Virus record (IMG/VR): IMGVR_UViG_3300017917_000952
Location: 142,752-206,751 of that record
Reading direction: 5' to 3' (one strand)
Length of the DNA: 64,000 nucleotides
Shown here: positions 34,950-64,000 of the stretch, piece after piece
How the letters are laid out: each line of letters starts with the position of its first letter
Numbering within the stretch: the stretch's first letter is position 1
Program-made: the position numbers and the translations under genes
The notes under the pieces: generated by a model
Databases searched by the model: none
What the model was told of the DNA's origin: nothing
What the model saw: only the letters and a program-made list of their open reading frames with translations

Positions 34950-35936
34950 ATGGCAACTCTAGCAGAAATTCGCGCAAAACTTCAACAAGCATCTCAAAAT
35001 AACACCGGTGGCGCAACTGGTGGAGACAACGCAATTTACCCCCATTGGAACATTCAAGAAGGCACTAGTGCTACTGTACGATTCCTTCCCGATGGCGATC
35101 CTAACAACACCTTTTTCTGGATTGAACGTGCAATGATCAAATTGCCTTTCGCCGGTATCAAAGGTGAAACTAACAGCAAACCAACAACTGTTCAAGTTCC
35201 TTGTATGGAAATGTGGGGAGAGTCTTGCCCAATTCTAACAGAAGTTCGTCCTTGGTTCAAGGATAAGAGTCTCGAAGAAATGGGTCGTAAGTACTGGAAG
35301 AAGAAGTCTTATCTGTTCCAGGGCTTTGTTGTTGATAGCAAATTGTCCGAAGACAAAACTCCTGAGAATCCTATCCGCCGATTCATTATCGGTAGCCAGA
35401 TTTTTAACATTGTTAAGAATGCGCTGATGGATAGTGAGATCGAAGAACTGCCTACCGACTATGTCCGTGGTCTTGATTTCAAGATTACCAAGACTAGCAA
35501 AGGTGGCTATGCTGACTATTCTACATCTAATTGGGCTCGTCGCGAACGTGCTCTTAGCGATGCAGAAAAGGCTGCAATTGACCAATACGGTCTGTTTAAG
35601 TTGAGCGACTTCCTGCCGAAGAAGCCAACTGAAGTTGAACTCAAGGTTATCAAGGAAATGTTCGAAGCGTCTGTTGACGGCGAAGCATTTGACATGGAAC
35701 GTTGGGGTCAATACTACAAGCCTGCAGGTATGTCTAGTAATACTGCTGGTTCTGCTCCTGCACGCCAGGCAGCACCTGCTCCGGTTGCACAGAAACCTGC
35801 GGTAGAGGAAGACGATCCCCCTTTTGAAACAGCGGCACCTGCCGCAACCCCAGTAGCCGCTCCTGCCGCATCTGGTGATGCAGGTAGTCGTGCCGCAGAC
35901 ATTATCGCGATGATTCGTAATCGTCAAAAGCAATAA
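34950..35936 (+). CDS. Single-stranded DNA-binding protein (gp32-like)
   Basis: VRFLP, C......CP, G.DFKITK..KGGYADY.TS core; Ala/Pro-acidic tail; TAAGGA RBS. Confidence 0.88.
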   Translation: MATLAEIRAKLQQASQNNTGGATGGDNAIYPHWNIQEGTSATVRFLPDGDPNNTFFWIERAMIKLPFAGIKGETNSKPTTVQVPCMEMWGESCPILTEVRPWFKDKSLEEMGRKYWKKKSYLFQGFVVDSKLSEDKTPENPIRRFIIGSQIFNIVKNALMDSEIEELPTDYVRGLDFKITKTSKGGYADYSTSNWARRERALSDAEKAAIDQYGLFKLSDFLPKKPTEVELKVIKEMFEASVDGEAFDMERWGQYYKPAGMSSNTAGSAPARQAAPAPVAQKPAVEEDDPPFETAAPAATPVAAPAASGDAGSRAADIIAMIRNRQKQ

Positions 35937-37013: not shown

Positions 37014-37268
37014 ATGGAAGAAGATCTAATCATTGAAATTTGGGATGTTTTCAAAGAATACATCTCCGACAAAAACAAAGAAACAGCCGCAAATCACTTT
37101 GTCGATATGCTTATCGGCAAAGATGTAGAAATCAGTGTGCTCAAAGGCATGATGGGGTATGATCCTCATCTTGACGATGCAATCACTCTTGCTACACAAG
37201 ATGAATTCGAAGAGGATGACGAATCCTACGACGAAGACGGCTGGGACTATGACGAAGACGAGGAATAA
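37014..37268 (+). CDS. Small acidic hypothetical protein
   Basis: 84-aa ORF with Asp/Glu tail; GAGGA RBS. Confidence 0.65.
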   Translation: MEEDLIIEIWDVFKEYISDKNKETAANHFVDMLIGKDVEISVLKGMMGYDPHLDDAITLATQDEFEEDDESYDEDGWDYDEDEE

Positions 37269-55971: not shown

Positions 55972-56011
55972 AAAAAAGCACCTGACCACCCTCCCCACCC
56001 TGGCCAGGTGC
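55972..56011 (-). terminator. Intrinsic terminator closing the early region
   Basis: Minus strand GCACCTGGCCA-12-TGGTCAGGTGC-TTTTTT, with one G-U pair that forms only on the minus strand. Confidence 0.8.
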
Positions 56012-56020
56012 CCCCACCGT

Positions 56021-56305
56021 TCAATCTTCTTCAACAACCTCACAGTCCCAGCGTTCGTCTGCAGGGTCGTAGCCTTCTTCTATGAGCTCCTGTACAGCGG
56101 CGTTGAACTCTGACTCAAGGTCCCATACAGCAGCCGCTACACGGATGTCCTTCTTGCGGCGTGCCCGTGCTGTGCCTGCTTGATAGACTAGTGGGTAGTG
56201 ATTGGCACAGTAGCTCTTGCCAGGTAGTGTAGGCTTACCGCAGGCGTGTGTGCCCTCGCCCAAGTAGGTACACTCTGTTACTGCTGTGCGCTTATCGTTG
56301 ATCAT
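56021..56305 (-). CDS. GcrA C-terminal-domain-like Cys3His protein
   Basis: C.Y.G.....CG.....GKSYC..H...VY pattern. Confidence 0.5.
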   Translation of the reverse strand: MINDKRTAVTECTYLGEGTHACGKPTLPGKSYCANHYPLVYQAGTARARRKKDIRVAAAVWDLESEFNAAVQELIEEGYDPADERWDCEVVEED

Positions 56306-56513
56306 TGTTGTTGTCCTTAGTGTCCAATTCAGGGTGACGCTTGCGGTACTCTGCTACTTCCTTCTGTATCTGCTCAATGAGCTCTGCTCGTGTCACGTGC
56401 TCTACACAGACAAATAGAGCCAAGATACACCAAAAGCCCCAAGTGTTCCAGTCCTGCCCAACTGCGTCTAACACTAGACCCAATGTAGCGTATAGCGTTA
56501 GACGCAGTAGCAT
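56292..56513 (-). CDS. Small membrane protein
   Basis: Two hydrophobic segments. Confidence 0.6.
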   Translation of the reverse strand: MLLRLTLYATLGLVLDAVGQDWNTWGFWCILALFVCVEHVTRAELIEQIQKEVAEYRKRHPELDTKDNNNDQR

Positions 56514-56514
56514 A

Positions 56515-57396
56515 TTAGCCTCGCTTCATGCAGGTAGTCTGTGCCATAGCAGTCCAAGCCTTGGGGAATGCCTTACGCAGATCCGCAATCTTGAGCACCA
56601 TACGCAGGCTGAGCTCACGCAGGCGGTCCTTGTTCTTGTTGATGAAGTCCAGGACTTCTTGCACAACAACGGGCTCGAACTCGTAGCGGTCCAACATGCC
56701 CTTTTCCACAATGTTCTTGATCCACAGCATCTTTTCACGCTGGGTGTCCATTTCCAAGTCCATGTAGTGGCAACGGCTTTCCAATGCGTCCAAGTGGCTA
56801 CGCAGTTTCTTGCTACGAACGTGCTCGAACTTAATATTAGTGATGAAGATAGCCGCACCCTTGAACTCAAAGCGGTCCGGAATGCCTTCACTGCGAAGGA
56901 TTCGGCTGTCCGTGTTCCACGAGATGAAGCGACGGTTGCCGCTGTCCAGAGCACCCTTGAGGATGTTCAAGCTCAGTTCTTCCTGCAGGATGTCGTCACA
57001 GTCGTCAAAGACTAGGACATGCTTTGAGTCCGAGAACTCGTAGAGCTTACTGTACAGGCCAATGGAGCTCATGGCACCCTTGACAACTTCGAACTTGGGC
57101 TTGCGTTCGCCCAGAGTATCAAACAGGCCGTCCTTTTGCAGTACTGCCTCCACATTGTGACTTTTACCAACGCCGGGAGGGCCGCTGACAATCATAGCAC
57201 GGACATCGCCACGCTTGACAGCCTTGGTCATCTCAGTGAGGATCTCAAAGCGCTCGTTGAGTCGCTCCAGAATTGCTTCGTCGCTTTCTTTGGCGATGCT
57301 GGCTTCTTTGGCTGCAATTGCATCGGTGTCCAGCTCAATGACGTTGCTGGTAACAGTGGCCTTGCTGGGCTTGCGAGCGGCGGAGGTACGTGCCAT
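56515..57396 (-). CDS. P-loop / AAA+ ATPase
   Basis: GPPGVGKS, VLVFDDCD, IFITN and ALESR motifs. Confidence 0.85.
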   Translation of the reverse strand: MARTSAARKPSKATVTSNVIELDTDAIAAKEASIAKESDEAILERLNERFEILTEMTKAVKRGDVRAMIVSGPPGVGKSHNVEAVLQKDGLFDTLGERKPKFEVVKGAMSSIGLYSKLYEFSDSKHVLVFDDCDDILQEELSLNILKGALDSGNRRFISWNTDSRILRSEGIPDRFEFKGAAIFITNIKFEHVRSKKLRSHLDALESRCHYMDLEMDTQREKMLWIKNIVEKGMLDRYEFEPVVVQEVLDFINKNKDRLRELSLRMVLKIADLRKAFPKAWTAMAQTTCMKRG

Positions 57397-57427
57397 TTGT
57401 GTTCCTTAGTGTGTTGTTGAAGTGTGT

Positions 57428-57456
57428 ATTATACTGTCGAAGGGCCTGTCTGTCAA
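57428..57456 (-). promoter_or_regulatory. Early promoter P1, TTGACA-17-TATAAT, with CA-rich leader and TAAGGA
   Basis: Exact consensus; GAAGGGC/GCCCTTC inverted repeat around the -35. Confidence 0.85.
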
Positions 57457-57473
57457 GCCCTTCTGCACTACAA

Positions 57474-57815
57474 TCAGTCCAGACGCGAACCAGCGTAGGC
57501 TTCGAAGCCATACTTGCGGAACACGTCAGCCGCGGCCTGTGCACCTGCTTCCAGAATGCCCACAGATTGGACGGGCAGTTTGGCAGGGTTCCACAGTTGG
57601 AAGGCCTTGGTGTAGTCTTGACGCACACCAGCGGCTTTCAGCATCTTGCCCAACTTGGTGTTGCCTTTGATCTTGTAGATGTTGGTCCAAGCAAAGCCGC
57701 AGGCATCACGATCACCGTACTTAGCCAGGGCGTCACGAGCAGCCTTGTTGGCTTCTTGCATGGCTTCGGCAACGATTGCGTTCACTTGCTCTTGGGTCAG
57801 GGTCAGTTGGGTCAT
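57474..57815 (-). CDS. Hypothetical early protein (DACGFAW motif)
   Basis: Own promoter and AAGGAG RBS. Confidence 0.75.
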   Translation of the reverse strand: MTQLTLTQEQVNAIVAEAMQEANKAARDALAKYGDRDACGFAWTNIYKIKGNTKLGKMLKAAGVRQDYTKAFQLWNPAKLPVQSVGILEAGAQAAADVFRKYGFEAYAGSRLD

Positions 57816-57847
57816 CTAGTGCTCCTTAGTGCGTTGTTGATGTGTGT

Positions 57848-57876
57848 ATTATACGGGTTTTTGGATGACCCGTCAA
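57848..57876 (-). promoter_or_regulatory. Early promoter P2, TTGACG-17-TATAAT
   Basis: Shared leader ending TAAGGAGCA. Confidence 0.85.
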
Positions 57877-57885
57877 CCACTAAGG

Positions 57886-58101
57886 TTAATCCTTTTTGTT
57901 GGTGATGTGGCTTTTAAACAACAGGCCGCAGAGCAGGCTAAGACCCCAGGCCTGTAGCCAGGTGATCTCCGGGAGCTTGAAGATCGACGGAATCACAGCG
58001 TCCCACAGTAGCATCACGGGCAAGGCCAGCAGGAAGCTCAGGAGTACGATCAGGGCGATGCCTGCGATCACAGTTGCGATGATGGTGCCTAGTGCGTTCA
58101 T
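57886..58101 (-). CDS. Small two-TM membrane protein
   Basis: Hydrophobic; LW....P..F.LP.IT..QA.GL..L motif. Confidence 0.7.
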   Translation of the reverse strand: MNALGTIIATVIAGIALIVLLSFLLALPVMLLWDAVIPSIFKLPEITWLQAWGLSLLCGLLFKSHITNKKD

Positions 58102-58343
58102 TTGCTGACTTTCTTGATCAGTTGGTTGGCCACGGTCATGTCGGAGTTGATGCCGTCATAGCATTGTTCGACGATGCTCATGATCATGAGGTCTACGATG
58201 CTCTTGGCTTCGTTGCGAAGTTTCTTTGTGGGCAGACCGTTGATGAATCGATCAACATCTGCTTTGTCGTTGCAGGCCCAGATGATGTCAGCCAGGACTC
58301 GTTGCTGGGCGTTGAGCCCTTCGATGGTGAACTCTACGCTCAT
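58098..58343 (-). CDS. Hypothetical early protein
   Basis: GAGGAG RBS; ATGA coupling. Confidence 0.7.
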   Translation of the reverse strand: MSVEFTIEGLNAQQRVLADIIWACNDKADVDRFINGLPTKKLRNEAKSIVDLMIMSIVEQCYDGINSDMTVANQLIKKVSK

Positions 58344-58346
58344 TGC

Positions 58347-58544
58347 TTACTCCTCGTTGATCAGGCTAACACCGAACAGGCCCAGCATGGCGCAGGTCAC
58401 TGCGGCACCAGCAAGGGCGAACCACTCTTTGAATCCTGCTTCGGGCGGCAGGTTCTCAACACCGCCAGCGACACCCATGAACCCGATGATGCAGAGGACC
58501 ACTGCCACTGCGCCGATGTTTTTGACCTTTTGCTTGAATTCCAT
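58347..58544 (-). CDS. Small two-TM membrane protein
   Basis: Own promoter and RBS; two hydrophobic segments. Confidence 0.7.
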   Translation of the reverse strand: MEFKQKVKNIGAVAVVLCIIGFMGVAGGVENLPPEAGFKEWFALAGAAVTCAMLGLFGVSLINEE

Positions 58545-58570
58545 TGTGTGCTCCTTGTTGCGATGTATGT

Positions 58571-58599
58571 ATTATAAGGCCGATTGGCCTCAGTGTCAA
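58571..58599 (-). promoter_or_regulatory. Early promoter P3, TTGACA-17-TATAAT
   Basis: The -35 contains the TGA stop of the upstream gene; 28-bp leader identical to P8. Confidence 0.85.
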
Positions 58600-58829
58600 C
58601 CCCAGTTCTTCTTGTCGCCGAACTGTTCGTTGTCACGGTAGCCTGCGGTGTAGGCTGCGATTTCTTCTGCGGTCATGCAGGCCATCTCAACCCGCGGGCT
58701 GGTCATCGTTGCACCCACATAGAAGTGAGGGTTGAAAGGACGGCCGTAGTAGGAATCGGCACTGCCACGATCGTAAGGGCCACCGTGGCGTTCATCATAG
58801 CCCGCTTTGTTCATCTCTTGCATCAGCAT
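58596..58829 (-). CDS. Hypothetical early protein (HGGPYDRGSADSYY motif)
   Basis: Own promoter and RBS. Confidence 0.75.
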   Translation of the reverse strand: MLMQEMNKAGYDERHGGPYDRGSADSYYGRPFNPHFYVGATMTSPRVEMACMTAEEIAAYTAGYRDNEQFGDKKNWG

Positions 58830-58857
58830 CTCTGCTCCTTTGTGTGTCTATGTGTGT

Positions 58858-58886
58858 ATTATACGATCAAAACGGCACGTCGTCAA
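58858..58886 (-). promoter_or_regulatory. Early promoter P4, TTGACG-17-TATAAT
   Basis: The -35 is encoded by the F-D-D codons of the upstream gene. Confidence 0.8.
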
Positions 58887-59097
58887 ACTCGTATTGTTCG
58901 TCGTACCAGTTGTCGTTGGTCTGGGGCGTCAGGACCGTGTCAACATGAACGGTGCCCAGGCTTTGCAGTTCCTGGATCTCCTGCTTGATTTCAGCACGGC
59001 GGGCATCAATCTTAGCATTGGACTCAGGGTCCAGTTCGCCAGCGATCTCGTCCAGGTAGATCAGTTCTTCGTACAGGTTGTTGATCTCGTCTTGCAT
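58867..59097 (-). CDS. Acidic early protein with SSB-Ct-like tail (EFDDVPF)
   Basis: Own promoter and RBS; C-terminus resembles bacterial SSB DFDDDIPF. Confidence 0.7.
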   Translation of the reverse strand: MQDEINNLYEELIYLDEIAGELDPESNAKIDARRAEIKQEIQELQSLGTVHVDTVLTPQTNDNWYDEQYEFDDVPF

Positions 59098-59123
59098 CGT
59101 GTGCTCCTTGTTGTGATGTGTGT

Positions 59124-59153
59124 ATTATACACTCGCAATGGCTGACAGAGCAA
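59124..59153 (-). promoter_or_regulatory. Early promoter P5, TTGCTC-18-TATAAT
   Basis: The -10 contains the TAA stop of the upstream gene; shared leader. Confidence 0.7.
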
Positions 59154-59238
59154 CCATAATCCAGATGGCAATCAGTTGAGCGATGCCAAAGTAGAACATG
59201 GCCCAAACCACTGTACAAAAACCAATGATCTTCAACAT
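59125..59238 (-). CDS. 37-aa membrane peptide (MLKIIGFC...IASV)
   Basis: TAAGGAG RBS; entirely hydrophobic; 3' part of ORF 59125..59427. Confidence 0.6.
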   Translation of the reverse strand: MLKIIGFCTVVWAMFYFGIAQLIAIWIMVALSAIASV

Positions 59239-59248
59239 CGTGCTCTCC

Positions 59249-59563
59249 TTAGCGGCAGACTTGACCGTAGAACTGACCTTGCTGGGTGTAGAGGGGGAAG
59301 CAACCGTTGGGCGCAGGGTAGGCAGGGCTATACTGCGGCAGGGTGCGAACTTCGGGCTGTTGGTACACAGGCGCAGGCAGGGTCTGCGTCTGTTGATAGA
59401 CAACCTGCGGCTGAGGCTGAACAACAACCTGCGGGCGGCTCATCTGTTGGTAGATCCAGTAGCCTGCAACACCAGCCAGGGCGCCTTGTTCACGGGGACC
59501 CCAAGCCAGTGCAGAACCTGTGGCTGTGATTGCGATCAAACCTGCTACGATTGCCTTTTTCAT
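59249..59563 (-). CDS. Secreted/periplasmic Pro-Gln-rich protein
   Basis: Signal peptide MKKAIVAGLIAITATGSALA; own promoter and RBS. Confidence 0.7.
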   Translation of the reverse strand: MKKAIVAGLIAITATGSALAWGPREQGALAGVAGYWIYQQMSRPQVVVQPQPQVVYQQTQTLPAPVYQQPEVRTLPQYSPAYPAPNGCFPLYTQQGQFYGQVCR

Positions 59564-59594
59564 CTTGAGCTCCTTTTTCGCTGTCGATGTGTGT

Positions 59595-59623
59595 ATTATA
59601 CGGCCGTTGGAAAAACCTGTCAA
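59595..59623 (-). promoter_or_regulatory. Early promoter P6, TTGACA-17-TATAAT
   Basis: Exact consensus; upstream AACCCT motif. Confidence 0.85.
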
Positions 59624-59626
59624 CCT

Positions 59627-59971
59627 TTAGGGTTGTTGTTTTTCTGCCACATGCTTGCACTGACCGCGGAACTTGAACCCAGGACAGGTACAGGACCAAA
59701 CGCCATCTTCTTCAGTGAGGTAATACTTCTCGCCACGACTGCCCTCTACGGTGATCACGCCCGGGTCCACGGTTGGAGTGCCTTCTTCAAGCTCAACAAA
59801 GGTCCTGCCTCGCGTGTCGAGCTTCAAGGGGTTCTTGAACTTGAACAACTTCTTAGAACCTCTGGGCACATAGGCCACAGCCTGCGTCATCGAGTCGTTC
59901 ATCACGTAGACGTGGTTGCAGTTCTGACCAAAGCCGTCAGTCCAAGTAGTGGTCTCAAGCATTATCTTCAT
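59627..59971 (-). CDS. SWIM zinc-finger protein (leaderless)
   Basis: WSCTCPGF.FR..CKHV motif; ATG 6 nt after TATAAT. Confidence 0.8.
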   Translation of the reverse strand: MKIMLETTTWTDGFGQNCNHVYVMNDSMTQAVAYVPRGSKKLFKFKNPLKLDTRGRTFVELEEGTPTVDPGVITVEGSRGEKYYLTEEDGVWSCTCPGFKFRGQCKHVAEKQQP

Positions 59972-59977
59972 GACTGT

Positions 59978-60006
59978 ATTATACGGTCAATCGATCTGGA
60001 TGTCAA
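59978..60006 (-). promoter_or_regulatory. Early promoter P7, TTGACA-17-TATAAT-6-ATG (leaderless)
   Basis: The -35 lies inside the V-D codons of the upstream gene. Confidence 0.8.
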
Positions 60007-60172
60007 CCAAGCGGCCTTCGCGGAAGATGAAGTATTCGTTGATCATGCCGTAGTAGGCCCAGATGCAGTCGTTGCCCGGGACCAGGGTGTAGCTCTTGAT
60101 CCCTCGCTTTTCATAGTGCTCTGCAACCAGAAGGACTTCCAGTTCGTTTAGGCTAGGGTCAATTCGGATCAT
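59987..60172 (-). CDS. Hypothetical early protein
   Basis: 61 aa; ATGA coupling. Confidence 0.65.
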   Translation of the reverse strand: MIRIDPSLNELEVLLVAEHYEKRGIKSYTLVPGNDCIWAYYGMINEYFIFREGRLVDIQID

Positions 60173-60384
60173 GCTCGCTCCATCATTCTCATCAGTTCAT
60201 TGTGCAGGTAGCCCATTTCCTCGTGCTCCACATAGAAGTCAGTACGGGGATCCCAGTAGCGACCTTCCTTCGGATCGTAGTACAGAACACGACCACCTGC
60301 GAACACGAACGGTCCTTCGAGGCCTTTGCGTGGGCCGTAGCCCTGGAGCAGTTCTTCCGTCTTACCAAGCACCTTGTATCCCAT
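60169..60384 (-). CDS. Hypothetical early protein (GLEGPF...LYYDPKEG.Y.DP.TD motif)
   Basis: Own promoter and RBS. Confidence 0.75.
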   Translation of the reverse strand: MGYKVLGKTEELLQGYGPRKGLEGPFVFAGGRVLYYDPKEGRYWDPRTDFYVEHEEMGYLHNELMRMMERA

Positions 60385-60410
60385 AGTCTGCTCCTTGTTG
60401 CGATGTATGT

Positions 60411-60439
60411 ATTATATCACCAATTGGAGTGCCTGTCAA
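60411..60439 (-). promoter_or_regulatory. Early promoter P8, TTGACA-17-TATAAT
   Basis: The -35 and spacer lie in the upstream coding sequence; its stop abuts the -10. Confidence 0.85.
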
Positions 60440-60764
60440 CCTCTTCTTGCGTGAATTGCCCGCCGCTACGGTCGGGATTTGCGGCCCAACTCTCCTGCAA
60501 TCTGCGCTCGCGCTCTGCTTCGTGCTTAGGGTCAATGTAGGCACTGTCCAGCAAGAGTTGATAGGCCAACTTCTCCAGGTTTGAGGGCATGTCGCCCATG
60601 GCTACACGGTTAGGAATCCGCTCCAGTTCGTCGATGCACTTCTGCACGAAGTCCACATGCATCTCAATGCCCACACTGTGCATAGGACGAAGCAGAACGA
60701 CGGGAGCAGTGCCCTTGGGTTGCAGGTTAGCCCTAAGGCGTTGGATGATGTCTTGGTCTTTCAT
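60417..60764 (-). CDS. Hypothetical early protein
   Basis: 115 aa; C-terminal SW..NPDRSGGQFT.EE motif. Confidence 0.65.
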   Translation of the reverse strand: MKDQDIIQRLRANLQPKGTAPVVLLRPMHSVGIEMHVDFVQKCIDELERIPNRVAMGDMPSNLEKLAYQLLLDSAYIDPKHEAERERRLQESWAANPDRSGGQFTQEEVDRHSNW

Positions 60765-60925
60765 ACGTTCACCTGTAAGACAACAGTTTCGTCGTCGTAT
60801 TCGTTAGCCTCGAAGTGATCCACCTGCTCTACATCGTAGATCTCTCCGCCCATGTTGTCATTAACTTCGACCAAGCAATCCTGCGGCATGGTCTTCAGGA
60901 TCTTGATCAGTTCTGCTACAGTCAT
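60761..60925 (-). CDS. 54-aa acidic hypothetical protein (MTVAELIKIL...), not in the ORF track
   Basis: Manually translated open frame; AAGGA RBS; ATGA coupling. Confidence 0.65.
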   Translation of the reverse strand: MTVAELIKILKTMPQDCLVEVNDNMGGEIYDVEQVDHFEANEYDDETVVLQVNV

Positions 60926-60926
60926 T

Positions 60927-61115
60927 TCAACGGTCCTTCAGTCGCTTCATGACCTTGAGCAGGTCGGGGTTGTTTTTGATCTTCTCCATAGCAGCCTCTT
61001 GCCGCTCCCACAGCAGGCGCTCGGCTTCAGTTTCCAGATTGTTGGCATAGTGGCCGTTGCCGCGATTCTGATCCTGCTTCTGCCACTTTGCGATCTGCTT
61101 CTTGGAAACTTTCAT
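60927..61115 (-). CDS. Hypothetical early protein
   Basis: Start MKVSKK after AAGGAGCA and promoter P9. Confidence 0.7.
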   Translation of the reverse strand: MKVSKKQIAKWQKQDQNRGNGHYANNLETEAERLLWERQEAAMEKIKNNPDLLKVMKRLKDR

Positions 61116-61142
61116 CGTCTGCTCCTTGCTGTCTATGTGTGT

Positions 61143-61184
61143 ATTATACCTTCTTTTGGATAACCCGTCAACCAAACGGGTTAT
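61143..61184 (-). promoter_or_regulatory. Early promoter P9, TTGACG-17-TATAAT, with 9-bp inverted repeat ATAACCCGT/ACGGGTTAT
   Basis: Repeat arms at 61160-68 and 61176-84. Confidence 0.85.
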
Positions 61185-61309
61185 TCGCTCCAAACGGGTT
61201 CGAAGGTGTAGCCCTTTTGCTGATAGTAGAGTCCATCGAAACTCTGCCAATCGCGGATGGGGATTACCAGTCCCAACTCTACTACACGGTAAGCAACAAT
61301 CGTCTTCAT
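61181..61309 (-). CDS. 42-aa hypothetical protein (leaderless)
   Basis: TATAAT-ACACAC-ATG; MKTIVAYR... Confidence 0.6.
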   Translation of the reverse strand: MKTIVAYRVVELGLVIPIRDWQSFDGLYYQQKGYTFEPVWSE

Positions 61310-61315
61310 GTGTGT

Positions 61316-61345
61316 ATTATACAGTCTCTTTGGCAGTTTGGACAA
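61316..61345 (-). promoter_or_regulatory. Early promoter P10, TTGTCC-18-TATAAT-6-ATG (leaderless)
   Basis: The -10 contains the upstream TAA stop. Confidence 0.7.
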
Positions 61346-61457
61346 CCGAATTGTCAAACAATGTGCCACCGTAGGCCTGCTGGAATGTCTGGGCAGTGGC
61401 CAGCAGGTAGAACTGATAGACGCGGCCGGTAGGAGTGATCAGTGTGTACTTCATCAT
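61317..61457 (-). CDS. 46-aa hypothetical protein (MMKYTLITPTGRVYQFY...), not in the ORF track
   Basis: Manually translated; TAATG overlap with the upstream gene; ends in the P10 -10 box. Confidence 0.6.
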   Translation of the reverse strand: MMKYTLITPTGRVYQFYLLATAQTFQQAYGGTLFDNSVVQTAKETV

Positions 61458-61641
61458 TACTTCTCGATTTTAACGCAAATGGGGGTCTTGATGTTCATGC
61501 CCCAGCGGAGATCGTCAACGGCCTTGTAGACAACCTTAGCGGCTGCTTCGCACTTTTCTTTAGTAGTGTGAACTCAGGGCCCATGTTCCAGTTGCTACCA
61601 GTGCCTACTACAATCATGACCCAAACAACCATTGCGTTCAT
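61457..61641 (-). pseudogene. Small exported/membrane protein gene with a frameshift near 61566-61570
   Basis: Removing 2 nt (AC) joins MNAMVV...GPEF to TTKEKCEAAAK...ICVKIEK*, whose stop overlaps the next ATG. Confidence 0.6.
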
Positions 61642-61668
61642 CGTGTGCTCCTTACTGTCTATGCATGT

Positions 61669-61711
61669 ATTATAACACCGTTTTGGATAACCCGTCAACC
61701 ACTAGGGTTAT
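61669..61711 (-). promoter_or_regulatory. Early promoter P11, TTGACG-18-TATAAT, with ATAACCC-11-GGGTTAT
   Basis: 21 bp identical to P9. Confidence 0.8.
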
Positions 61712-61717
61712 AGAGTC

Positions 61718-61751
61718 AAAAGAATAGGGCGGCTCTCCCGAGCGGCCCTAT
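61718..61751 (-). terminator. Intrinsic terminator with GGGA tetraloop
   Basis: ATAGGGC-C-GCTC-GGGA-GAGC-C-GCCCTAT-TCTTTT. Confidence 0.75.
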
Positions 61752-61823
61752 CCAACACTAACACGGCTGAGGGAGCAACTCAACCGGCCCGGGACACTAC
61801 CCCCGGGACTTCGGAGCAACCAA
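61718..61823 (-). ncRNA. Candidate structured 3'-UTR/small RNA with two GUUGCUCC anti-SD motifs
   Basis: Three hairpins, two with G-U pairs that form only on the minus strand; no ORF; ends in a terminator. Confidence 0.4.
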
Positions 61824-62093
61824 TTAAGCGAGGCCTAACTGGATGGCACGGTAACCAGCGGCAACAACACGACGGCTGGGCATACCGATTTCATATTCGG
61901 TAACAGTAACACCATTACCAGCCTTGCGAGTGTTTGCATAAACAGCATAACCTGCTTGACGGATACGGCTTGCCTCTGCGGCAACGTTCTTGATACCGAA
62001 ACGCTTCTGTGCTTCAGAAGCAGTAACTTTCTCACCACTCTTCAATGCGGTCAGCATCTTGAATGTCTTTGTACCTTGATTGATCTTCAACAT
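61824..62093 (-). CDS. Winged helix-turn-helix DNA-binding protein
   Basis: L.AL.SG...T..EA..RFG..N..A..S.IR..GY pattern; CAAGGA RBS. Confidence 0.75.
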   Translation of the reverse strand: MLKINQGTKTFKMLTALKSGEKVTASEAQKRFGIKNVAAEASRIRQAGYAVYANTRKAGNGVTVTEYEIGMPSRRVVAAGYRAIQLGLA

Positions 62094-62109
62094 TTTCTTT
62101 TCCTTGTTT

Positions 62110-62162
62110 TTAGACTGCTGTGCAGTTGATATAATAGTACAGCAGTCTAAGGTCAAGGTCAA
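62110..62162 (-). promoter_or_regulatory. Promoter P12 (TTGACC-17-TACTAT) with 12-bp perfect inverted repeat TTAGACTGCTGT/ACAGCAGTCTAA, operator-like
   Basis: Arms at 62110-21 and 62139-50 flank the -10 and start site; the -35 contains the upstream TGA. Confidence 0.7.
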
Positions 62163-62377
62163 GCATCAATCTTGCCAAATTCTTTTTGTGTGTAGTATTG
62201 GTTTAACCTACGCTGAATCATCGTAAGCAGATCACCGTGATCGTCCGAAACAATGAATCGGACAGGGCAACGGCCCCAGGTGTTGTGCTTGACGAATTCA
62301 AAATACCATTTGCGGTGCTGACGATTCGTCTCGTCAAAAGCCACCCAAGGTCTACCAACGAATGCTAATCTGCTCAT
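62159..62377 (-). CDS. Hypothetical protein (RP.V.FD..N..HR...W..CPVRF motif)
   Basis: GGAG RBS. Confidence 0.7.
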   Translation of the reverse strand: MSRLAFVGRPWVAFDETNRQHRKWYFEFVKHNTWGRCPVRFIVSDDHGDLLTMIQRRLNQYYTQKEFGKIDA

Positions 62378-62467
62378 CTGTTTGCTCCAGTGAATATCCC
62401 GCTGTATTGTGTAGATACCCGGTCTTACGGCACTCTGGCCCGCCGGGCGCCTTCACACGGCAGTAAC

Positions 62468-62884
62468 TTAGAACGGAGCGTCTTCCAGTTGTGCTTCGAC
62501 TTCAGCCTTGGAAACAACAGTTTCTTTGACAGCGGTCTTAGCCTTAGCAGCCTTGGCCTTTGCCTTGATAGCGTCCATAGACGGCTTGGACTTCTTGGCA
62601 GGAGCCTTGGCCTTAGGTGCAGCCTTAGCAGCCTTAGGGGTCTCGGTGCGCTTCTCAACCTCTGCTTCGATAGCGGCACGAACTGCGGCATTGCCGTTGT
62701 CAAAGTTGATCTGAAGCAGGAATGCCACAGCCTCGTCTTTGGTCATCGGATGCTTGAGCTCGATGATATCAATGTCCTTGTGGCCGTTCTTGGCCAGGAC
62801 CTTAACACGCATCTGATCATTAGCAAAGCGAGCCTTGATCTTGCCGTTGAGAGTAGAAACACCTGCGAACTTGAATGTAGACAT
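62468..62884 (-). CDS. Protein with histone-H1-like Ala/Lys/Pro tail ending LEDAPF
   Basis: AKAAPKAKAPAKK repeats; AAGGAG RBS. Confidence 0.75.
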   Translation of the reverse strand: MSTFKFAGVSTLNGKIKARFANDQMRVKVLAKNGHKDIDIIELKHPMTKDEAVAFLLQINFDNGNAAVRAAIEAEVEKRTETPKAAKAAPKAKAPAKKSKPSMDAIKAKAKAAKAKTAVKETVVSKAEVEAQLEDAPF

Positions 62885-62944
62885 GAAAATCTCCTTGTGT
62901 GTATGTCTGTGAATGTCTGCGTCATTACCTAACGCATTAATAAT

Positions 62945-62973
62945 AGTTTAACGTCTTTGGACAGGTTTGTCAA
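62945..62973 (-). promoter_or_regulatory. Promoter P13, TTGACA-17-TAAACT; leader has a 5' hairpin
   Basis: Leader hairpin UGCGUUA-5-UGACGCA followed by a CA-rich tract. Confidence 0.7.
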
Positions 62974-62983
62974 CCAAAATGTG

Positions 62984-63169
62984 TCAAGAGTTTAGTGTGT
63001 TGTATGGGCTAAGTTCATCCTCCTGTGGCGAATCTGCCACACCAAAACTTTCCAGAACCTCGAGCACCGTTTCGATTGGGCAGTTCAGTTCTGCGGCAAT
63101 CCGTTTGGCACTCAGGCCGTCAATGTACAGTTGTTCAATGTCGTACAGTAGCTCTGCAACCTTGCTCAT
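62984..63169 (-). CDS. Small HTH-like protein
   Basis: G.SA..IA..L.CP...V..V pattern. Confidence 0.6.
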   Translation of the reverse strand: MSKVAELLYDIEQLYIDGLSAKRIAAELNCPIETVLEVLESFGVADSPQEDELSPYNTLNS

Positions 63170-63552
63170 TCTTCGTTCTCCATTGCTTGAAACTCAAAAG
63201 CCTCGCTCAGCAGTCCGTCAAACTCACCGTAGAACTCCACGTACCAACGGCCGTCGCGACGCAGGATATAGTTGTATTCTTCGAACTGGCCGTTCTTGCG
63301 ATAGTCAGCATAGTCCTTAAACATACGCTGAGGGCAGTCCTCGCCGCGTTCCTTGTAGAACTCACAGCCGTCAACGGTCTCGCTCAGCGTAGACATGTCG
63401 CCGTTGTCCAGCAGTTCGCGGACTTCGAACGGATCGGTGTAGGCATTCAGCAGGATCTTGCCGTTGTGATCCAGGTAGCCATCCCAGTGGCAGTAGATTT
63501 GACCCACGGTACCGTCTGCGTATTCCAGGGCGATCATGCTTCGTGTTGCCAT
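63166..63552 (-). CDS. Hypothetical phage early protein (M.TRS.I...YCHWDGY family)
   Basis: Own promoter and RBS. Confidence 0.75.
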   Translation of the reverse strand: MATRSMIALEYADGTVGQIYCHWDGYLDHNGKILLNAYTDPFEVRELLDNGDMSTLSETVDGCEFYKERGEDCPQRMFKDYADYRKNGQFEEYNYILRRDGRWYVEFYGEFDGLLSEAFEFQAMENEE

Positions 63553-63586
63553 TTGCGTTGCTCCTTAGTGCGTTGTCGATGTGCTA

Positions 63587-63615
63587 ATTATACAGTGGTT
63601 TTACCAACCTGTCAA
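63587..63615 (-). promoter_or_regulatory. Early promoter P14, TTGACA-17-TATAAT
   Basis: Leader shares 18 bp with P2. Confidence 0.85.
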
Positions 63616-63619
63616 CCAA

Positions 63620-63763
63620 TTACTTGGCCTTTTTGGCGGGCTTCTGCTTGGCTTCCTGGGCAGCAATCTTGCCACTGTAGGCACTGCCGGCCTTGTGGAT
63701 CAGACCAGTCTTGGTGAAAGTGATAGTGCCGCCAGTGCTAGAAGGAATAGTTTTGCCGATCAT
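63620..63763 (-). CDS. 47-aa basic hypothetical protein
   Basis: Start MIGKT after GGAGCA and P15. Confidence 0.65.
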   Translation of the reverse strand: MIGKTIPSSTGGTITFTKTGLIHKAGSAYSGKIAAQEAKQKPAKKAK

Positions 63764-63794
63764 TGTGTGCTCCAATTGCGTTGTTGATGTGTGT

Positions 63795-63823
63795 ATTATA
63801 GCAGGACTTCTAAGCCCTGTCAA
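63795..63823 (-). promoter_or_regulatory. Early promoter P15, TTGACA-17-TATAAT
   Basis: Exact consensus; TAACCCTAG motif upstream. Confidence 0.85.
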
Positions 63824-63832
63824 CTACTAGGG

Positions 63833-64000
63833 TTAATCTAGCAGGCACTTGACCACAATAGCAGGGCCGTAGGCCCAAGGACCATTACCGCCATCAGTGA
63901 CCTTGACATTCTCAGCGCCTGCGGCCTTTTGCAGAGCGATAAGCAGATTGGTGTTGTTGCGGAAGTAGCACTTGACACGGCGCTCCGTGCCAGTGTGGGC
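63833..64000 (-). CDS. 3' part of a hypothetical protein running off the window edge
   Basis: Open frame ...RRVKCYF...KCLLD*; its stop is the TAA of the TAACCC motif. Confidence 0.55.
   Translation of the reverse strand, partial: AHTGTERRVKCYFRNNTNLLIALQKAAGAENVKVTDGGNGPWAYGPAIVVKCLLD

What the first reader, a model, noticed from the sequence alone, without database searches (positions are those of the whole stretch)
58867..59097. Early acidic protein ending in an SSB C-terminal tip mimic (YEFDDVPF)
Seen: 76-aa acidic helical protein ending DEQYEFDDVPF. Established: the bacterial SSB tail (E. coli MDFDDDIPF) docks ExoI, RecQ, PriA, RNase HI, Pol III chi and others. The phage's own gp32-like SSB has only an internal EEDDPPF. 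Inference: a decoy or adaptor that hijacks or inhibits host SSB-interacting proteins or SSB-sensing defences. Caveat: the FDD codons double as the -35 of P4.
Basis: partly seen in the sequence, partly recalled or inferred. Interest (0 to 1): 0.6.

Follow-up and report, generated by a model that had tools for sequence, protein, structure and literature searches.

The report
Phage early protein with SSB-like tip
A small early protein of an uncultured freshwater jumbo-type phage carries a floppy acidic tail whose last residues (FDDVPF) match the docking tip of bacterial single-strand-DNA-binding proteins; the match is real, but it is a recent swap on a portable tail and its binding partner is untested.

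Summary
Window 58867..59097 (minus strand) encodes a 76-aa acidic protein (pI 4.05) ending NDNWYDEQYEFDDVPF, and its last codons overlap the next gene's promoter (TTGACG-17-TATAAT).

The protein has three parts:
- A helical hairpin (residues 2-48) shared by more than 100 small phage proteins, most of which are hairpin only.
- A disordered linker.
- An acidic-aromatic tail.

The conserved part of the tail is NDNWYDEQYE. This peptide also ends at least three unrelated kinds of small phage ORFs, so it is portable. The SSB-like tip occurs only in relatives at least 92% identical. Sister lineages carry DTDY[L/N/I] in the same frame and with the same stop codon.

FDDVPF is still unlikely to be noise:
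- DDVPF-COOH is a genuine bacterial SSB tip. Of 119 metagenomic ORFs ending this way, 56 are SSBs.
- The phage's own gp32-like SSB family conserves the same motif internally ([DE]x[DE]-x-P-[FW]-[ED], 106 of 120).
- A second early protein (138 aa, more than 1,500 homologs) ends in a conserved EDAP[F/Y].

A fold with E. coli ExoI gave only weak support (0.46 against 0.01 for the best control).

The tail is a plausible docking peptide for readers of SSB-type tips, from host or phage. Whether it acts as a decoy or an adaptor is untested.

The parts
58867..59097 (-). Gene for the 76-aa acidic early protein (stop codon at 58867..58869)
   Evidence: ORF list and sequence. 56 homologs found by word search and 48 cluster representatives. 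The same protein occurs on contigs of several independent assemblies.
58954..59097 (-). Residues 1-48: conserved helical hairpin, the core of the family (LYEELIYLDEIAGELDPESNAKIDARR)
   Evidence: AF2 helices at 2-18 and 24-48, pLDDT 81-88. Invariant E10, L15, E17, G20 and N27. Stand-alone proteins of 45-60 aa in IMG/VR loci and in the Kyanoviridae phage C48C1. No Pfam, PHROG or PDB relative.
58918..58953 (-). Residues 49-60: variable disordered linker
   Evidence: pLDDT below 52. pN/pS is about 0.49 among type-B pairs. Length varies, with longer linkers in P0008 and P0014.
58888..58917 (-). Residues 61-70: NDNWYDEQYE, a portable acidic-aromatic tail motif and the most constrained part of the protein
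   Evidence: pN 0.02-0.04 against pS 0.37-0.40. The same peptide, in different codons, ends unrelated small ORFs in IMG/VR (L166-L173, L181, L187, L194).
58870..58887 (-). Residues 71-76: FDDVPF, the SSB-type tip, a derived state specific to this lineage
   Evidence: Present only in P0001-P0004. Sister sequences have LDTDY[L/N/I] in the same frame with the same TGA stop. Window versus type B at the tip: pN 0.60, pS 0.50. Identical to natural SSB tips.
58858..58886 (-). Sigma-70-type promoter of the next gene (TTGACG-17-TATAAT), overlapping codons 71-76 and the stop
   Evidence: Promoter scan, 11 of 12 matches. One of 13 TATAATACA sites in the genome, 12 of them on the minus strand at window 57.4-63.8 kb. 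Same layout in all tail-bearing homologs.
59124..59129 (-). -10 hexamer TATAAT of the gene's own promoter cassette (weak -35 TTGCTC, 18-nt spacer), followed by AAGGAG and the ATG
   Evidence: Read from the sequence. Listed among the TATAATACA sites. Below the threshold of the scan.
35805..35828 (+). EEDDPPFE motif in the disordered C-terminal linker of the phage's gp32-like SSB (gene 34950..35936)
   Evidence: PF08804 and phrog_1192. 106 of 120 family members have [DE]x[DE]-x-P-[FW]-[ED] about 36 aa from the end, with x = P 40, A 36, V 22. PA5oct has DDLPWE.
62468..62884 (-). Second early protein (138 aa) with a C-terminal tip LEDAPF after a Lys/Ala-rich linker
   Evidence: More than 1,564 homologs. 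118 of the best 120 end in an aromatic residue, mostly [LM]E[DE]AP[F/Y]. A type-B phage also has it, ending LDEAPF. No Pfam, PHROG or PDB fold match.

Best explanation
This is a modular early protein. It is transcribed by host RNA polymerase from a cassette-type sigma-70 promoter. It joins a conserved 45-residue helical hairpin (the family core, target unknown) to a disordered acidic-aromatic tail that acts as a docking peptide.

The tail has two elements. The first is the portable motif NDNWYDEQYE, which several unrelated small phage proteins also carry at their ends. The second is a short terminal tip. In this lineage the ancestral tip LDTDY[L/N/I] was replaced by FDDVPF. That tip reproduces the acidic-acidic-hydrophobic-Pro-Phe-COOH tip of bacterial SSB. 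It belongs to the same class of motif that this phage group conserves inside its own gp32-like SSB and at the end of a 138-aa early protein.

The inferred mechanism is that the terminal Phe and its carboxylate, with the flanking acidic residues, plug into the pocket of proteins that read SSB-type tips. These could be host SSB partners (such as ExoI, RecQ, PriA, chi or RecO) or a phage-encoded reader.

Shown here: the architecture, the conservation pattern, the tip swap, the identity of the tip with natural SSB tips, and the recurrence of the motif in the phage.
For: - Architecture of a folded hairpin plus a disordered tail.
- The tail motif is under strong purifying selection (pN 0.02-0.04 against pS 0.37-0.40). 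It is portable across unrelated ORFs, with different codons and mostly no promoter downstream.
- Five of the last six residues differ from the sister lineage while the flanks stay nearly identical (tip pN 0.60, pS 0.50).
- DDVPF-COOH is a natural SSB tip: 56 of 119 ORFs ending this way are SSBs, 8 of 10 tested hit PF00436, and L124 ends LDFDDVPF.
- The gp32-like family conserves [DE]x[DE]xP[FW][ED] in 106 of 120 members, including EDDVPFE.
- The 138-aa family conserves an EDAP[F/Y] tip.
- Two of the six [DE][DE]xP[FWY] hits in the genome are exactly C-terminal.
- The allele is present in contigs from several independent studies.
- ExoI fold: ipSAE 0.46 against 0.01 for the best control, rated 'weak support'.
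- Phage proteins are known to read host SSB tips, for example Red-beta and RecT.
Against: - The tip is confined to a shallow clade (at least 92% identity) with no sequence variation in it, so purifying selection on DDVPF itself cannot be shown.
- Sister lineages conserve a different tip, and most family members lack any tail.
- The replaced codons coincide with the spacer of an overlapping promoter cassette, a likely recombination joint, and the F/L-D codons are fixed by the -35 TTGAC.
- The complex score is weak and may reflect the model's memory of the solved ExoI-SSB peptide complex. Partner pLDDT is 36-40 and no contacts were returned.
- The host is unknown and E. coli ExoI is only a surrogate.
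- The gp32 motif is internal, so its reader need not be a classical SSB-tip pocket, which requires a free terminal carboxylate.
Confidence: 0.4

Rival explanations
1. The functional tail element is only the portable NDNWYDEQYE motif, whose reader is unknown and unrelated to SSB. The last four residues are tolerant filler. FDDVPF arose by chance when the spacer of the overlapping promoter cassette was exchanged or mutated, so the SSB likeness is coincidental.
For: - Ends after the motif vary freely across contexts: ND, NDY, E, DME, DYI, DTDY[L/I/N], DDVPF.
- The replaced segment coincides with the promoter spacer, and the -35 hexamer fixes the F/L-D codons.
- Genes downstream of the promoter differ between close relatives, which indicates recombination at the cassette.
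- The tip occurs only in a shallow clade.
Against: - Type-B tips are conserved through synonymous changes (ACA/ACG, GAC/GAT, TAC/TAT), so the end is not free filler there.
- No other promoter with this spacer was found in the fetched loci or in IMG/VR.
- The L71F change lies outside the spacer and also moves towards the SSB pattern.
- The odds of landing by chance on a motif that the same phage conserves in two other proteins are low.
Confidence: 0.33
2. The acidic-aromatic tail mimics single-stranded DNA. It binds the DNA-binding cleft of an OB-fold protein (host SSB or the phage gp32-like protein) or another DNA-binding enzyme, acting on SSB itself rather than on SSB's partners.
For: - Tail residues 46-76 carry 7 acidic residues, no basic residue, and W, Y, Y, F and F.
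- It is disordered.
- Established knowledge, cited: the acidic tail of T7 gp2.5 mediates its protein contacts. That this tail also competes with ssDNA for the protein's own cleft is my recollection, not checked here.
Against: There is no direct evidence. The motif is short and sequence-specific (an invariant W-Y-D-E-Q-Y-E), which fits a pocket-binding peptide better than a generic polyanion. This reading does not explain the switch to a PF tip.
Confidence: 0.12
3. The tail is a sliding-clamp-binding epitope, like the interchangeable hydrophobic-acidic C-termini of T4 gp43, gp55 and gp33. It would tether the hairpin to the phage or host clamp.
For: T4-family phages share a portable hydrophobic-acidic C-terminal motif on several proteins, joined by a variable unstructured linker (PMC2988020). 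Here too a tail motif is shared by several small proteins.
Against: This phage's family-B DNA polymerase ends ...GSLFSFE, a T4-like clamp tail that does not resemble WYDEQYEFDDVPF. No clamp gene could be located. The PF09116 search did not ring even in the control genomes, and the contig is only about 58% complete.
Confidence: 0.05

Closest known systems
C-terminal tip of bacterial SSB (E. coli ...DFDDDIPF), the docking peptide for ExoI, RecQ, PriA, chi, RecO and others
   Same: Disordered linker followed by acidic residues, a hydrophobic residue, Pro and a C-terminal Phe. The last five residues (DDVPF) are identical to the tips of many environmental SSBs, and one SSB ends LDFDDVPF.
   Different: There is no OB fold and no PF00436 match. 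The protein is a 76-aa helical hairpin. The tip is not conserved across the family. Binding is untested apart from a weak fold score.
Interchangeable clamp-binding C-termini of T4 gp43, gp55 and gp33
   Same: A short acidic-hydrophobic C-terminal peptide, carried by several otherwise unrelated phage proteins and joined to them by a variable unstructured linker.
   Different: The sequence differs (WYDEQYEL... against a T4-like ...SLFSFE on this phage's polymerase).
Acidic C-terminal tails of phage SSBs (T7 gp2.5 with its terminal Phe; the T4 gp32 A-domain)
   Same: An acidic disordered tail with an essential terminal aromatic residue that recruits replisome proteins. The phage's own gp32-like protein carries a motif of the same class.
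   Different: The protein studied here is not an SSB. In this phage group the gp32 motif is internal, followed by about 36 residues and a conserved terminal helix.
Phage proteins that read the host SSB tip (Red-beta, RecT)
   Same: They show that the last 7 residues of SSB form a modular interface used in phage-host biology.
   Different: Those proteins bind the tip, whereas this protein carries one.

Membership tests
Bacterial SSB family (PF00436) | N-terminal OB-fold ssDNA-binding domain | tested here: not met
   No Pfam hit apart from a sub-threshold MerR match. The AF2 model is a helical hairpin. No PDB relative by profile search.
SSB-type C-terminal tip (motif class) | Acidic-acidic-[I/L/V]-Pro-Phe at the free C-terminus | tested here: met
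   Ends FDDVPF-stop. The same five residues end 56 SSBs recovered from metagenomes, and 8 of 10 tested are PF00436.
SSB-type C-terminal tip (motif class) | The tip sits on an intrinsically disordered linker | tested here: met
   Residues 49-76 have pLDDT of about 47-51 and no secondary structure.
SSB-type C-terminal tip (motif class) | The tip is conserved among homologs | tested here: not met
   Present only in P0001-P0004 (at least 92% identity). P0005-P0011, P0014 and P0057-P0066 end DTDY[L/N/I]. Most members have no tail.
SSB-type C-terminal tip (motif class) | Phe-dependent binding to the pocket of an SSB partner (for example ExoI) | tested here: inconclusive
   ESMFold2 complex of E. coli ExoI with residues 45-76: ipSAE 0.46/0.46/0.45 against 0.01 for the best of 3 controls. 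The tool rated this 'weak support', gave partner pLDDT 36-40, listed no contacts, and warned the result may come from memory of a solved complex.
Small-hairpin phage protein family (unnamed; core LYEELIYLDEIAGELDPESNA) | Conserved helix-loop-helix of about 45 residues with invariant E10, L15, E17, G20 and N27 | tested here: met
   56 plus 48 homologs, E-values down to 1e-43. Alignment A1. 26 IMG/VR loci. Phage C48C1.
Portable WYDEQYE-tail proteins (unnamed) | [ND][DS]WYDEQYE[L/I/F] within the last 20 residues or fewer of a small phage ORF | tested here: met
   Residues 61-71 here. The same motif ends ORFs with unrelated N-terminal parts in L166-L170, L172, L173, L181, L187 and L194.
T4-type clamp-binding C-terminal epitope | Tail resembles the C-terminus of the phage's own DNA polymerase | tested here: not met
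   The polymerase (G000 76298-78985) ends ...GSLFSFE.
T4-type clamp-binding C-terminal epitope | A phage sliding clamp is present and binds the tail | not testable with these tools
   The PF09116 search found nothing, but it also did not ring in the control genomes.

The most novel reading that the evidence does not exclude
This group of freshwater and PA5oct-like phages uses an SSB-tip-like peptide code ([DE]D-x-P-[F/W/Y]). The motif appears on the phages' own gp32-like SSB and on at least two early proteins, and serves to plug into or compete for the host's SSB interaction hub. The 76-aa protein would then be a natural tip-swap experiment: a portable docking tail retargeted by four codons. 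It would be the first natural, phage-encoded competitive decoy or adaptor for the SSB interactome.
Probability: 0.2. Interest if true: 0.75.

Novelty: new variant of a known kind. Interest (0 to 1): 0.55.

Why it matters
The SSB tip is an essential interaction hub in bacterial genome maintenance and has been proposed as an antibiotic target. Three literature searches found no phage protein that carries the tip without being an SSB.

If the tip is functional, this locus offers a compact, testable case of short-motif mimicry in phage-host or intra-phage regulation. Nature has already supplied the control, because type-A (DDVPF) and type-B (DTDYL) tails sit on otherwise near-identical proteins.

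Three by-products stand regardless and are directly testable by pull-down:
- a conserved acidic-x-Pro-Phe/Trp motif in a large gp32-like SSB family, including PA5oct;
- a family of more than 1,500 early proteins with a conserved EDAP[F/Y] tip;
- a portable WYDEQYE tail on several unrelated small proteins.

If the tip proves inert, the case still shows how promoter cassettes that overlap gene ends can rewrite protein C-termini.

Tried and rejected
- **Cultured-phage searches.** Megablast of the region and tblastn of the protein against cultured phages found no significant match. Only the hairpin of phage C48C1 appeared, at E = 0.06.
- **Family and structure libraries.** Pfam, PHROGs, a PDB profile search and the ESM Atlas gave nothing usable for the 76-aa protein. 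Atlas structure hits were generic hairpins.
- **DNA-level constraint.** I considered that NDNWYDEQYE is conserved only at the DNA level, as an upstream promoter element. I rejected this: synonymous differences are present (pS 0.37-0.40), and the peptide recurs with other codons and mostly without a promoter downstream. Other promoters of the cassette type do not share that upstream sequence.
- **Origin of the tip by promoter swap.** The exact promoter string is absent from IMG/VR, and the spacer occurs only in the three type-A loci. The metagenome 18-mer scan returned no promoter contexts; it returned genes ending DDVPF instead.
- **Tail-only protein query.** I replaced it with degenerate DNA patterns. 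The genome-contig scan gave only chance matches.
- **Clamp hypothesis.** The PF09116 search was uninformative because its controls did not ring. The polymerase tail is dissimilar.
- **Fixed downstream partner of the hairpin gene.** None. The neighbouring genes vary.
- **Fold of the 138-aa protein.** No PDB match: Foldseek E at least 0.48, VIA Z at most 4.4.
- **SSB-sensing defences as the target.** Published DARNA and Retron-Eco8 work shows activation without the SSB tail.
- **Limit of the homolog search.** It sees only proteins of about 42-133 aa, so longer fusions of the hairpin would have been missed.

Full report
**What is there**

The window is the last 64 kb of a single 206,751-bp viral contig, which CheckV rates as about 58% complete. 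The phage is an uncultured myovirus. Its large terminase is 54% identical to that of Pseudomonas jumbo phage PA5oct. It encodes a tail sheath, a UvsX-like recombinase, a DnaB-like helicase and a gp32-like SSB. Near-identical DNA occurs in pond, freshwater, estuary and aquaculture metagenomes from 10 studies.

The finding lies in a block of small minus-strand genes at about 56-64 kb. This block has 50-53% G+C, against 37-47% for the rest of the window. It is punctuated by 12 cassettes of the form gGTTGACa-N17-TATAATACACACAT...AAGGAG...ATG. PA5oct likewise relies on host RNA polymerase and has TTGAC/TATAATA promoters (PMC7318152). The region is therefore an early region read by host RNA polymerase.

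**The observation**

The ORF at 58867..59097 (minus strand) encodes 76 aa ending NDNWYDEQYEFDDVPF, with pI 4.05. AlphaFold2 with the family alignment gives two helices (2-18 and 24-48, pLDDT 81-88) and a disordered residue range 49-76.

It is the only ORF among 1,558 in the contig that ends in an SSB-like tip.

**Conservation**

Homolog searches found 56 proteins and 48 cluster representatives, plus 26 IMG/VR loci and one cultured Kyanoviridae phage, C48C1.

What they share is the hairpin, LYEELIYLDEIAGELDPESNAKIDARR. Most members are 45-60 aa and stop just after it.

A tail exists only in one subclade. There it has the same length, frame, TGA stop and promoter overlap everywhere, but two different tips:
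- FDDVPF in P0001-P0004, which are at least 92% identical to the window protein;
- LDTDY[L/N/I] in all others.

Nei-Gojobori counts show the following:

| Region | Comparison | pN | pS |
|---|---|---|---|
| Residues 61-70 (NDNWYDEQYE) | both comparisons | 0.02-0.04 | 0.37-0.40 |
| Type-B tip | among type-B pairs | 0.08 | 0.27 |
| Tip (residues 71-76) | window versus type B | 0.60 | 0.50 |

Residues 61-70 are the most constrained part of the protein, and the type-B tip is also constrained. At the tip, the window and type B differ in five of six residues while the flanks stay almost unchanged. No variation exists within the DDVPF codons of the three type-A loci with DNA. Contigs from four further studies cover the tail with 0-4 differences and no listed substitution in 58867-58900. 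The allele is therefore stable in nature, but the clade is too young to test selection on the tip itself.

**The tail is portable**

Degenerate DNA patterns for the tail motif, scanned over IMG/VR, found [ND][DS]WYDEQYE[L/I] in several other small ORFs whose remaining sequence is unrelated:
- at the end of HTH-like ORFs of 57-66 aa (L166, L167, L168, L181), which give only weak Pfam HTH hits;
- at the end of ORFs of 71-75 aa starting MEFEYE.. (L187 ends ELDTDYI, L194 ends ELDYI);
- near the start of an acidic 63-aa ORF (L171).

Codons differ, and most of these ORFs have a ribosome-binding site rather than a promoter downstream. The peptide itself is therefore conserved and mobile.

The ends after the motif vary (ND, NDY, E, DME, DYI, DTDY[L/I/N]). 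FDDVPF is unique to the window's lineage and is the derived state. The closest documented precedent for a shared docking tail on a variable linker is the set of interchangeable clamp-binding C-termini of T4 gp43, gp55 and gp33 (PMC2988020). This phage's own polymerase, however, ends ...GSLFSFE, so the clamp is an unlikely reader.

**Is FDDVPF meaningful?**

Three results argue that it is.

1. An exact 18-mer encoding DDVPF-stop retrieved 120 metagenomic stretches, none in a promoter context. 119 gave ORFs of at least 30 aa ending DDVPF, and 56 of these match an SSB profile built here. 8 of 10 tested hit PF00436 at 1e-34 to 1e-40. One SSB ends LDFDDVPF. The rest include DUF3127 proteins and UvrD/PcrA helicases.
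2. The gp32-like SSB family of this phage group carries, in an otherwise variable Ala/Pro-rich linker about 36 residues from the end, the motif [DE]x[DE]-x-P-[F/W]-[E/D] in 106 of 120 members. The x position is P in 40, A in 36 and V in 22, and EDDVPFE occurs 15 times. PA5oct has DDLPWE, while more distant relatives lack the motif. An acidic residue follows the aromatic one in 104 of the 106, and it could stand in for a terminal carboxylate (inference).
3. A second early protein (62468..62884, 138 aa) has a folded N-terminal domain, a Lys/Ala-rich linker and the tip LEDAPF. It has more than 1,564 homologs, and 118 of the best 120 end in an aromatic residue, mostly EDAP[F/Y]. A type-B phage has it too.

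In the whole contig, [DE][DE]xP[FWY] occurs six times in six frames, and two of these are exactly C-terminal. The phage thus appears to use this motif class, and the 76-aa protein acquired it recently.

**Binding test**

One complex job was available. E. coli ExoI was folded with residues 45-76. It gave ipSAE 0.46, 0.46 and 0.45, against 0.00, 0.01 and 0.01 for three controls. The tool rated this 'weak support'. By its calibration, 51 of 78 solved complexes and 2 of 108 mismatched pairs reached the mark, but only 5 of those 78 solved complexes did so at 0.60 or below, as did all 4 mismatches that passed. Partner pLDDT was 36-40, the runs agreed in at least 27% of contacts, and no interface was reported. 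The tool also warns that a pass may come from memory of a solved complex. This shows likeness, not binding, and the host is not E. coli.

- The tip is not a family feature.
- The replaced codons coincide with the spacer of an overlapping promoter cassette. Genes downstream of that cassette differ between close relatives, so recombination at the cassette could have rewritten the end by accident.
- On the other side, the L71F change lies outside the spacer, and no other promoter with this spacer was found.
- Known defences triggered by phage SSB (DARNA, Retron-Eco8) do not depend on the SSB tail, so that part of the idea has no support.

**Verdict**

The best reading (confidence about 0.4) is a modular early protein whose portable docking tail was recently retipped with an SSB-type peptide. 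It would work as an adaptor or competitor at a pocket that reads such tips. The main rival (about 0.33) is that only the WYDEQYE motif matters and the PF tip is an accident of promoter-cassette turnover.

I found no report of a non-SSB phage protein carrying an SSB tip, so if real it is a new variant of a known kind.

Noticed in passing
window 62468..62884 (-): A 138-aa early protein with a confidently folded beta/alpha N-terminal domain (pLDDT about 90), a Lys/Ala/Pro-rich basic linker and a C-terminal tip LEDAPF. It has more than 1,564 homologs in metagenomes, and 118 of the best 120 end in an aromatic residue ([LM]E[DE]AP[F/Y]). It has no Pfam, PHROG, cultured-phage or PDB fold match.
   Followed up: partly
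window 34950..35936 (+), motif at 35805..35828: The gp32-like SSB family conserves an internal acidic-x-Pro-Phe/Trp-acidic motif about 36 residues before a conserved terminal helix (AADIIAMIRNRQ). It is present in 106 of 120 homologs, and PA5oct has DDLPWE. It is absent from the Sinorhizobium, E. coli (Asteriusvirus) and Vibrio relatives.
   Followed up: partly
window about 56000..64000: The minus-strand block of small early genes has 50-53% G+C, against 37-47% in the rest of the window. This is a sharp compositional break at the contig end.
   Followed up: no
window 57433..63800 (-), for example 58571..58599: Twelve near-identical promoter cassettes (gGTTGACa-N17-TATAATACACACAT...AAGGAG) flank the small genes. 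Several ORFs end ...WG-stop with the TGA inside the -35 hexamer (for example 58596..58829 ends KKNWG, and many hairpin homologs end SRWG). Promoters therefore shape protein C-termini and probably act as recombination joints, as early-promoter cassettes do in T4-type phages (my recollection, not checked).
   Followed up: partly
L004:1330..1416 and L001/L036 equivalents: In relatives, the promoter that overlaps the tail is followed directly, 7 nt after the -10, by an ATG. It opens a hydrophobic mini-ORF of about 28 aa, possibly a leaderless small membrane peptide. The window has a different downstream gene instead.
   Followed up: no
window 37014..37268 (+): An 84-aa ORF immediately after the UvsX-like recombinase gene ends in an extremely acidic, aromatic-studded tail (...DESYDEDGWDYDEDEE).
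   Followed up: no
L064:8949..11333 (-), also L054, L088, L111, L127, L131; L104:3354..3809: Metagenomic UvrD/PcrA-type helicases (about 790-807 aa, with a PcrA/UvrD tudor domain) and DUF3127 proteins also end in DDVPF. SSB-type tips therefore occur on non-SSB bacterial proteins.
   Followed up: partly
G000:C1:76298-78985 (+), outside the window: The family-B DNA polymerase ends ...TFGSLFSFE, a hydrophobic-acidic tail of the T4 clamp-binding kind.
   Followed up: partly
L166, L167, L168, L171, L181, L187, L194 (IMG/VR): The WYDEQYEL tail is carried by several unrelated small phage ORFs. L181 has two such ORFs about 300 bp apart, and L187 and L194 share with P0008 the longer linker HDELERDHDE.YEPD.
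   Followed up: partly
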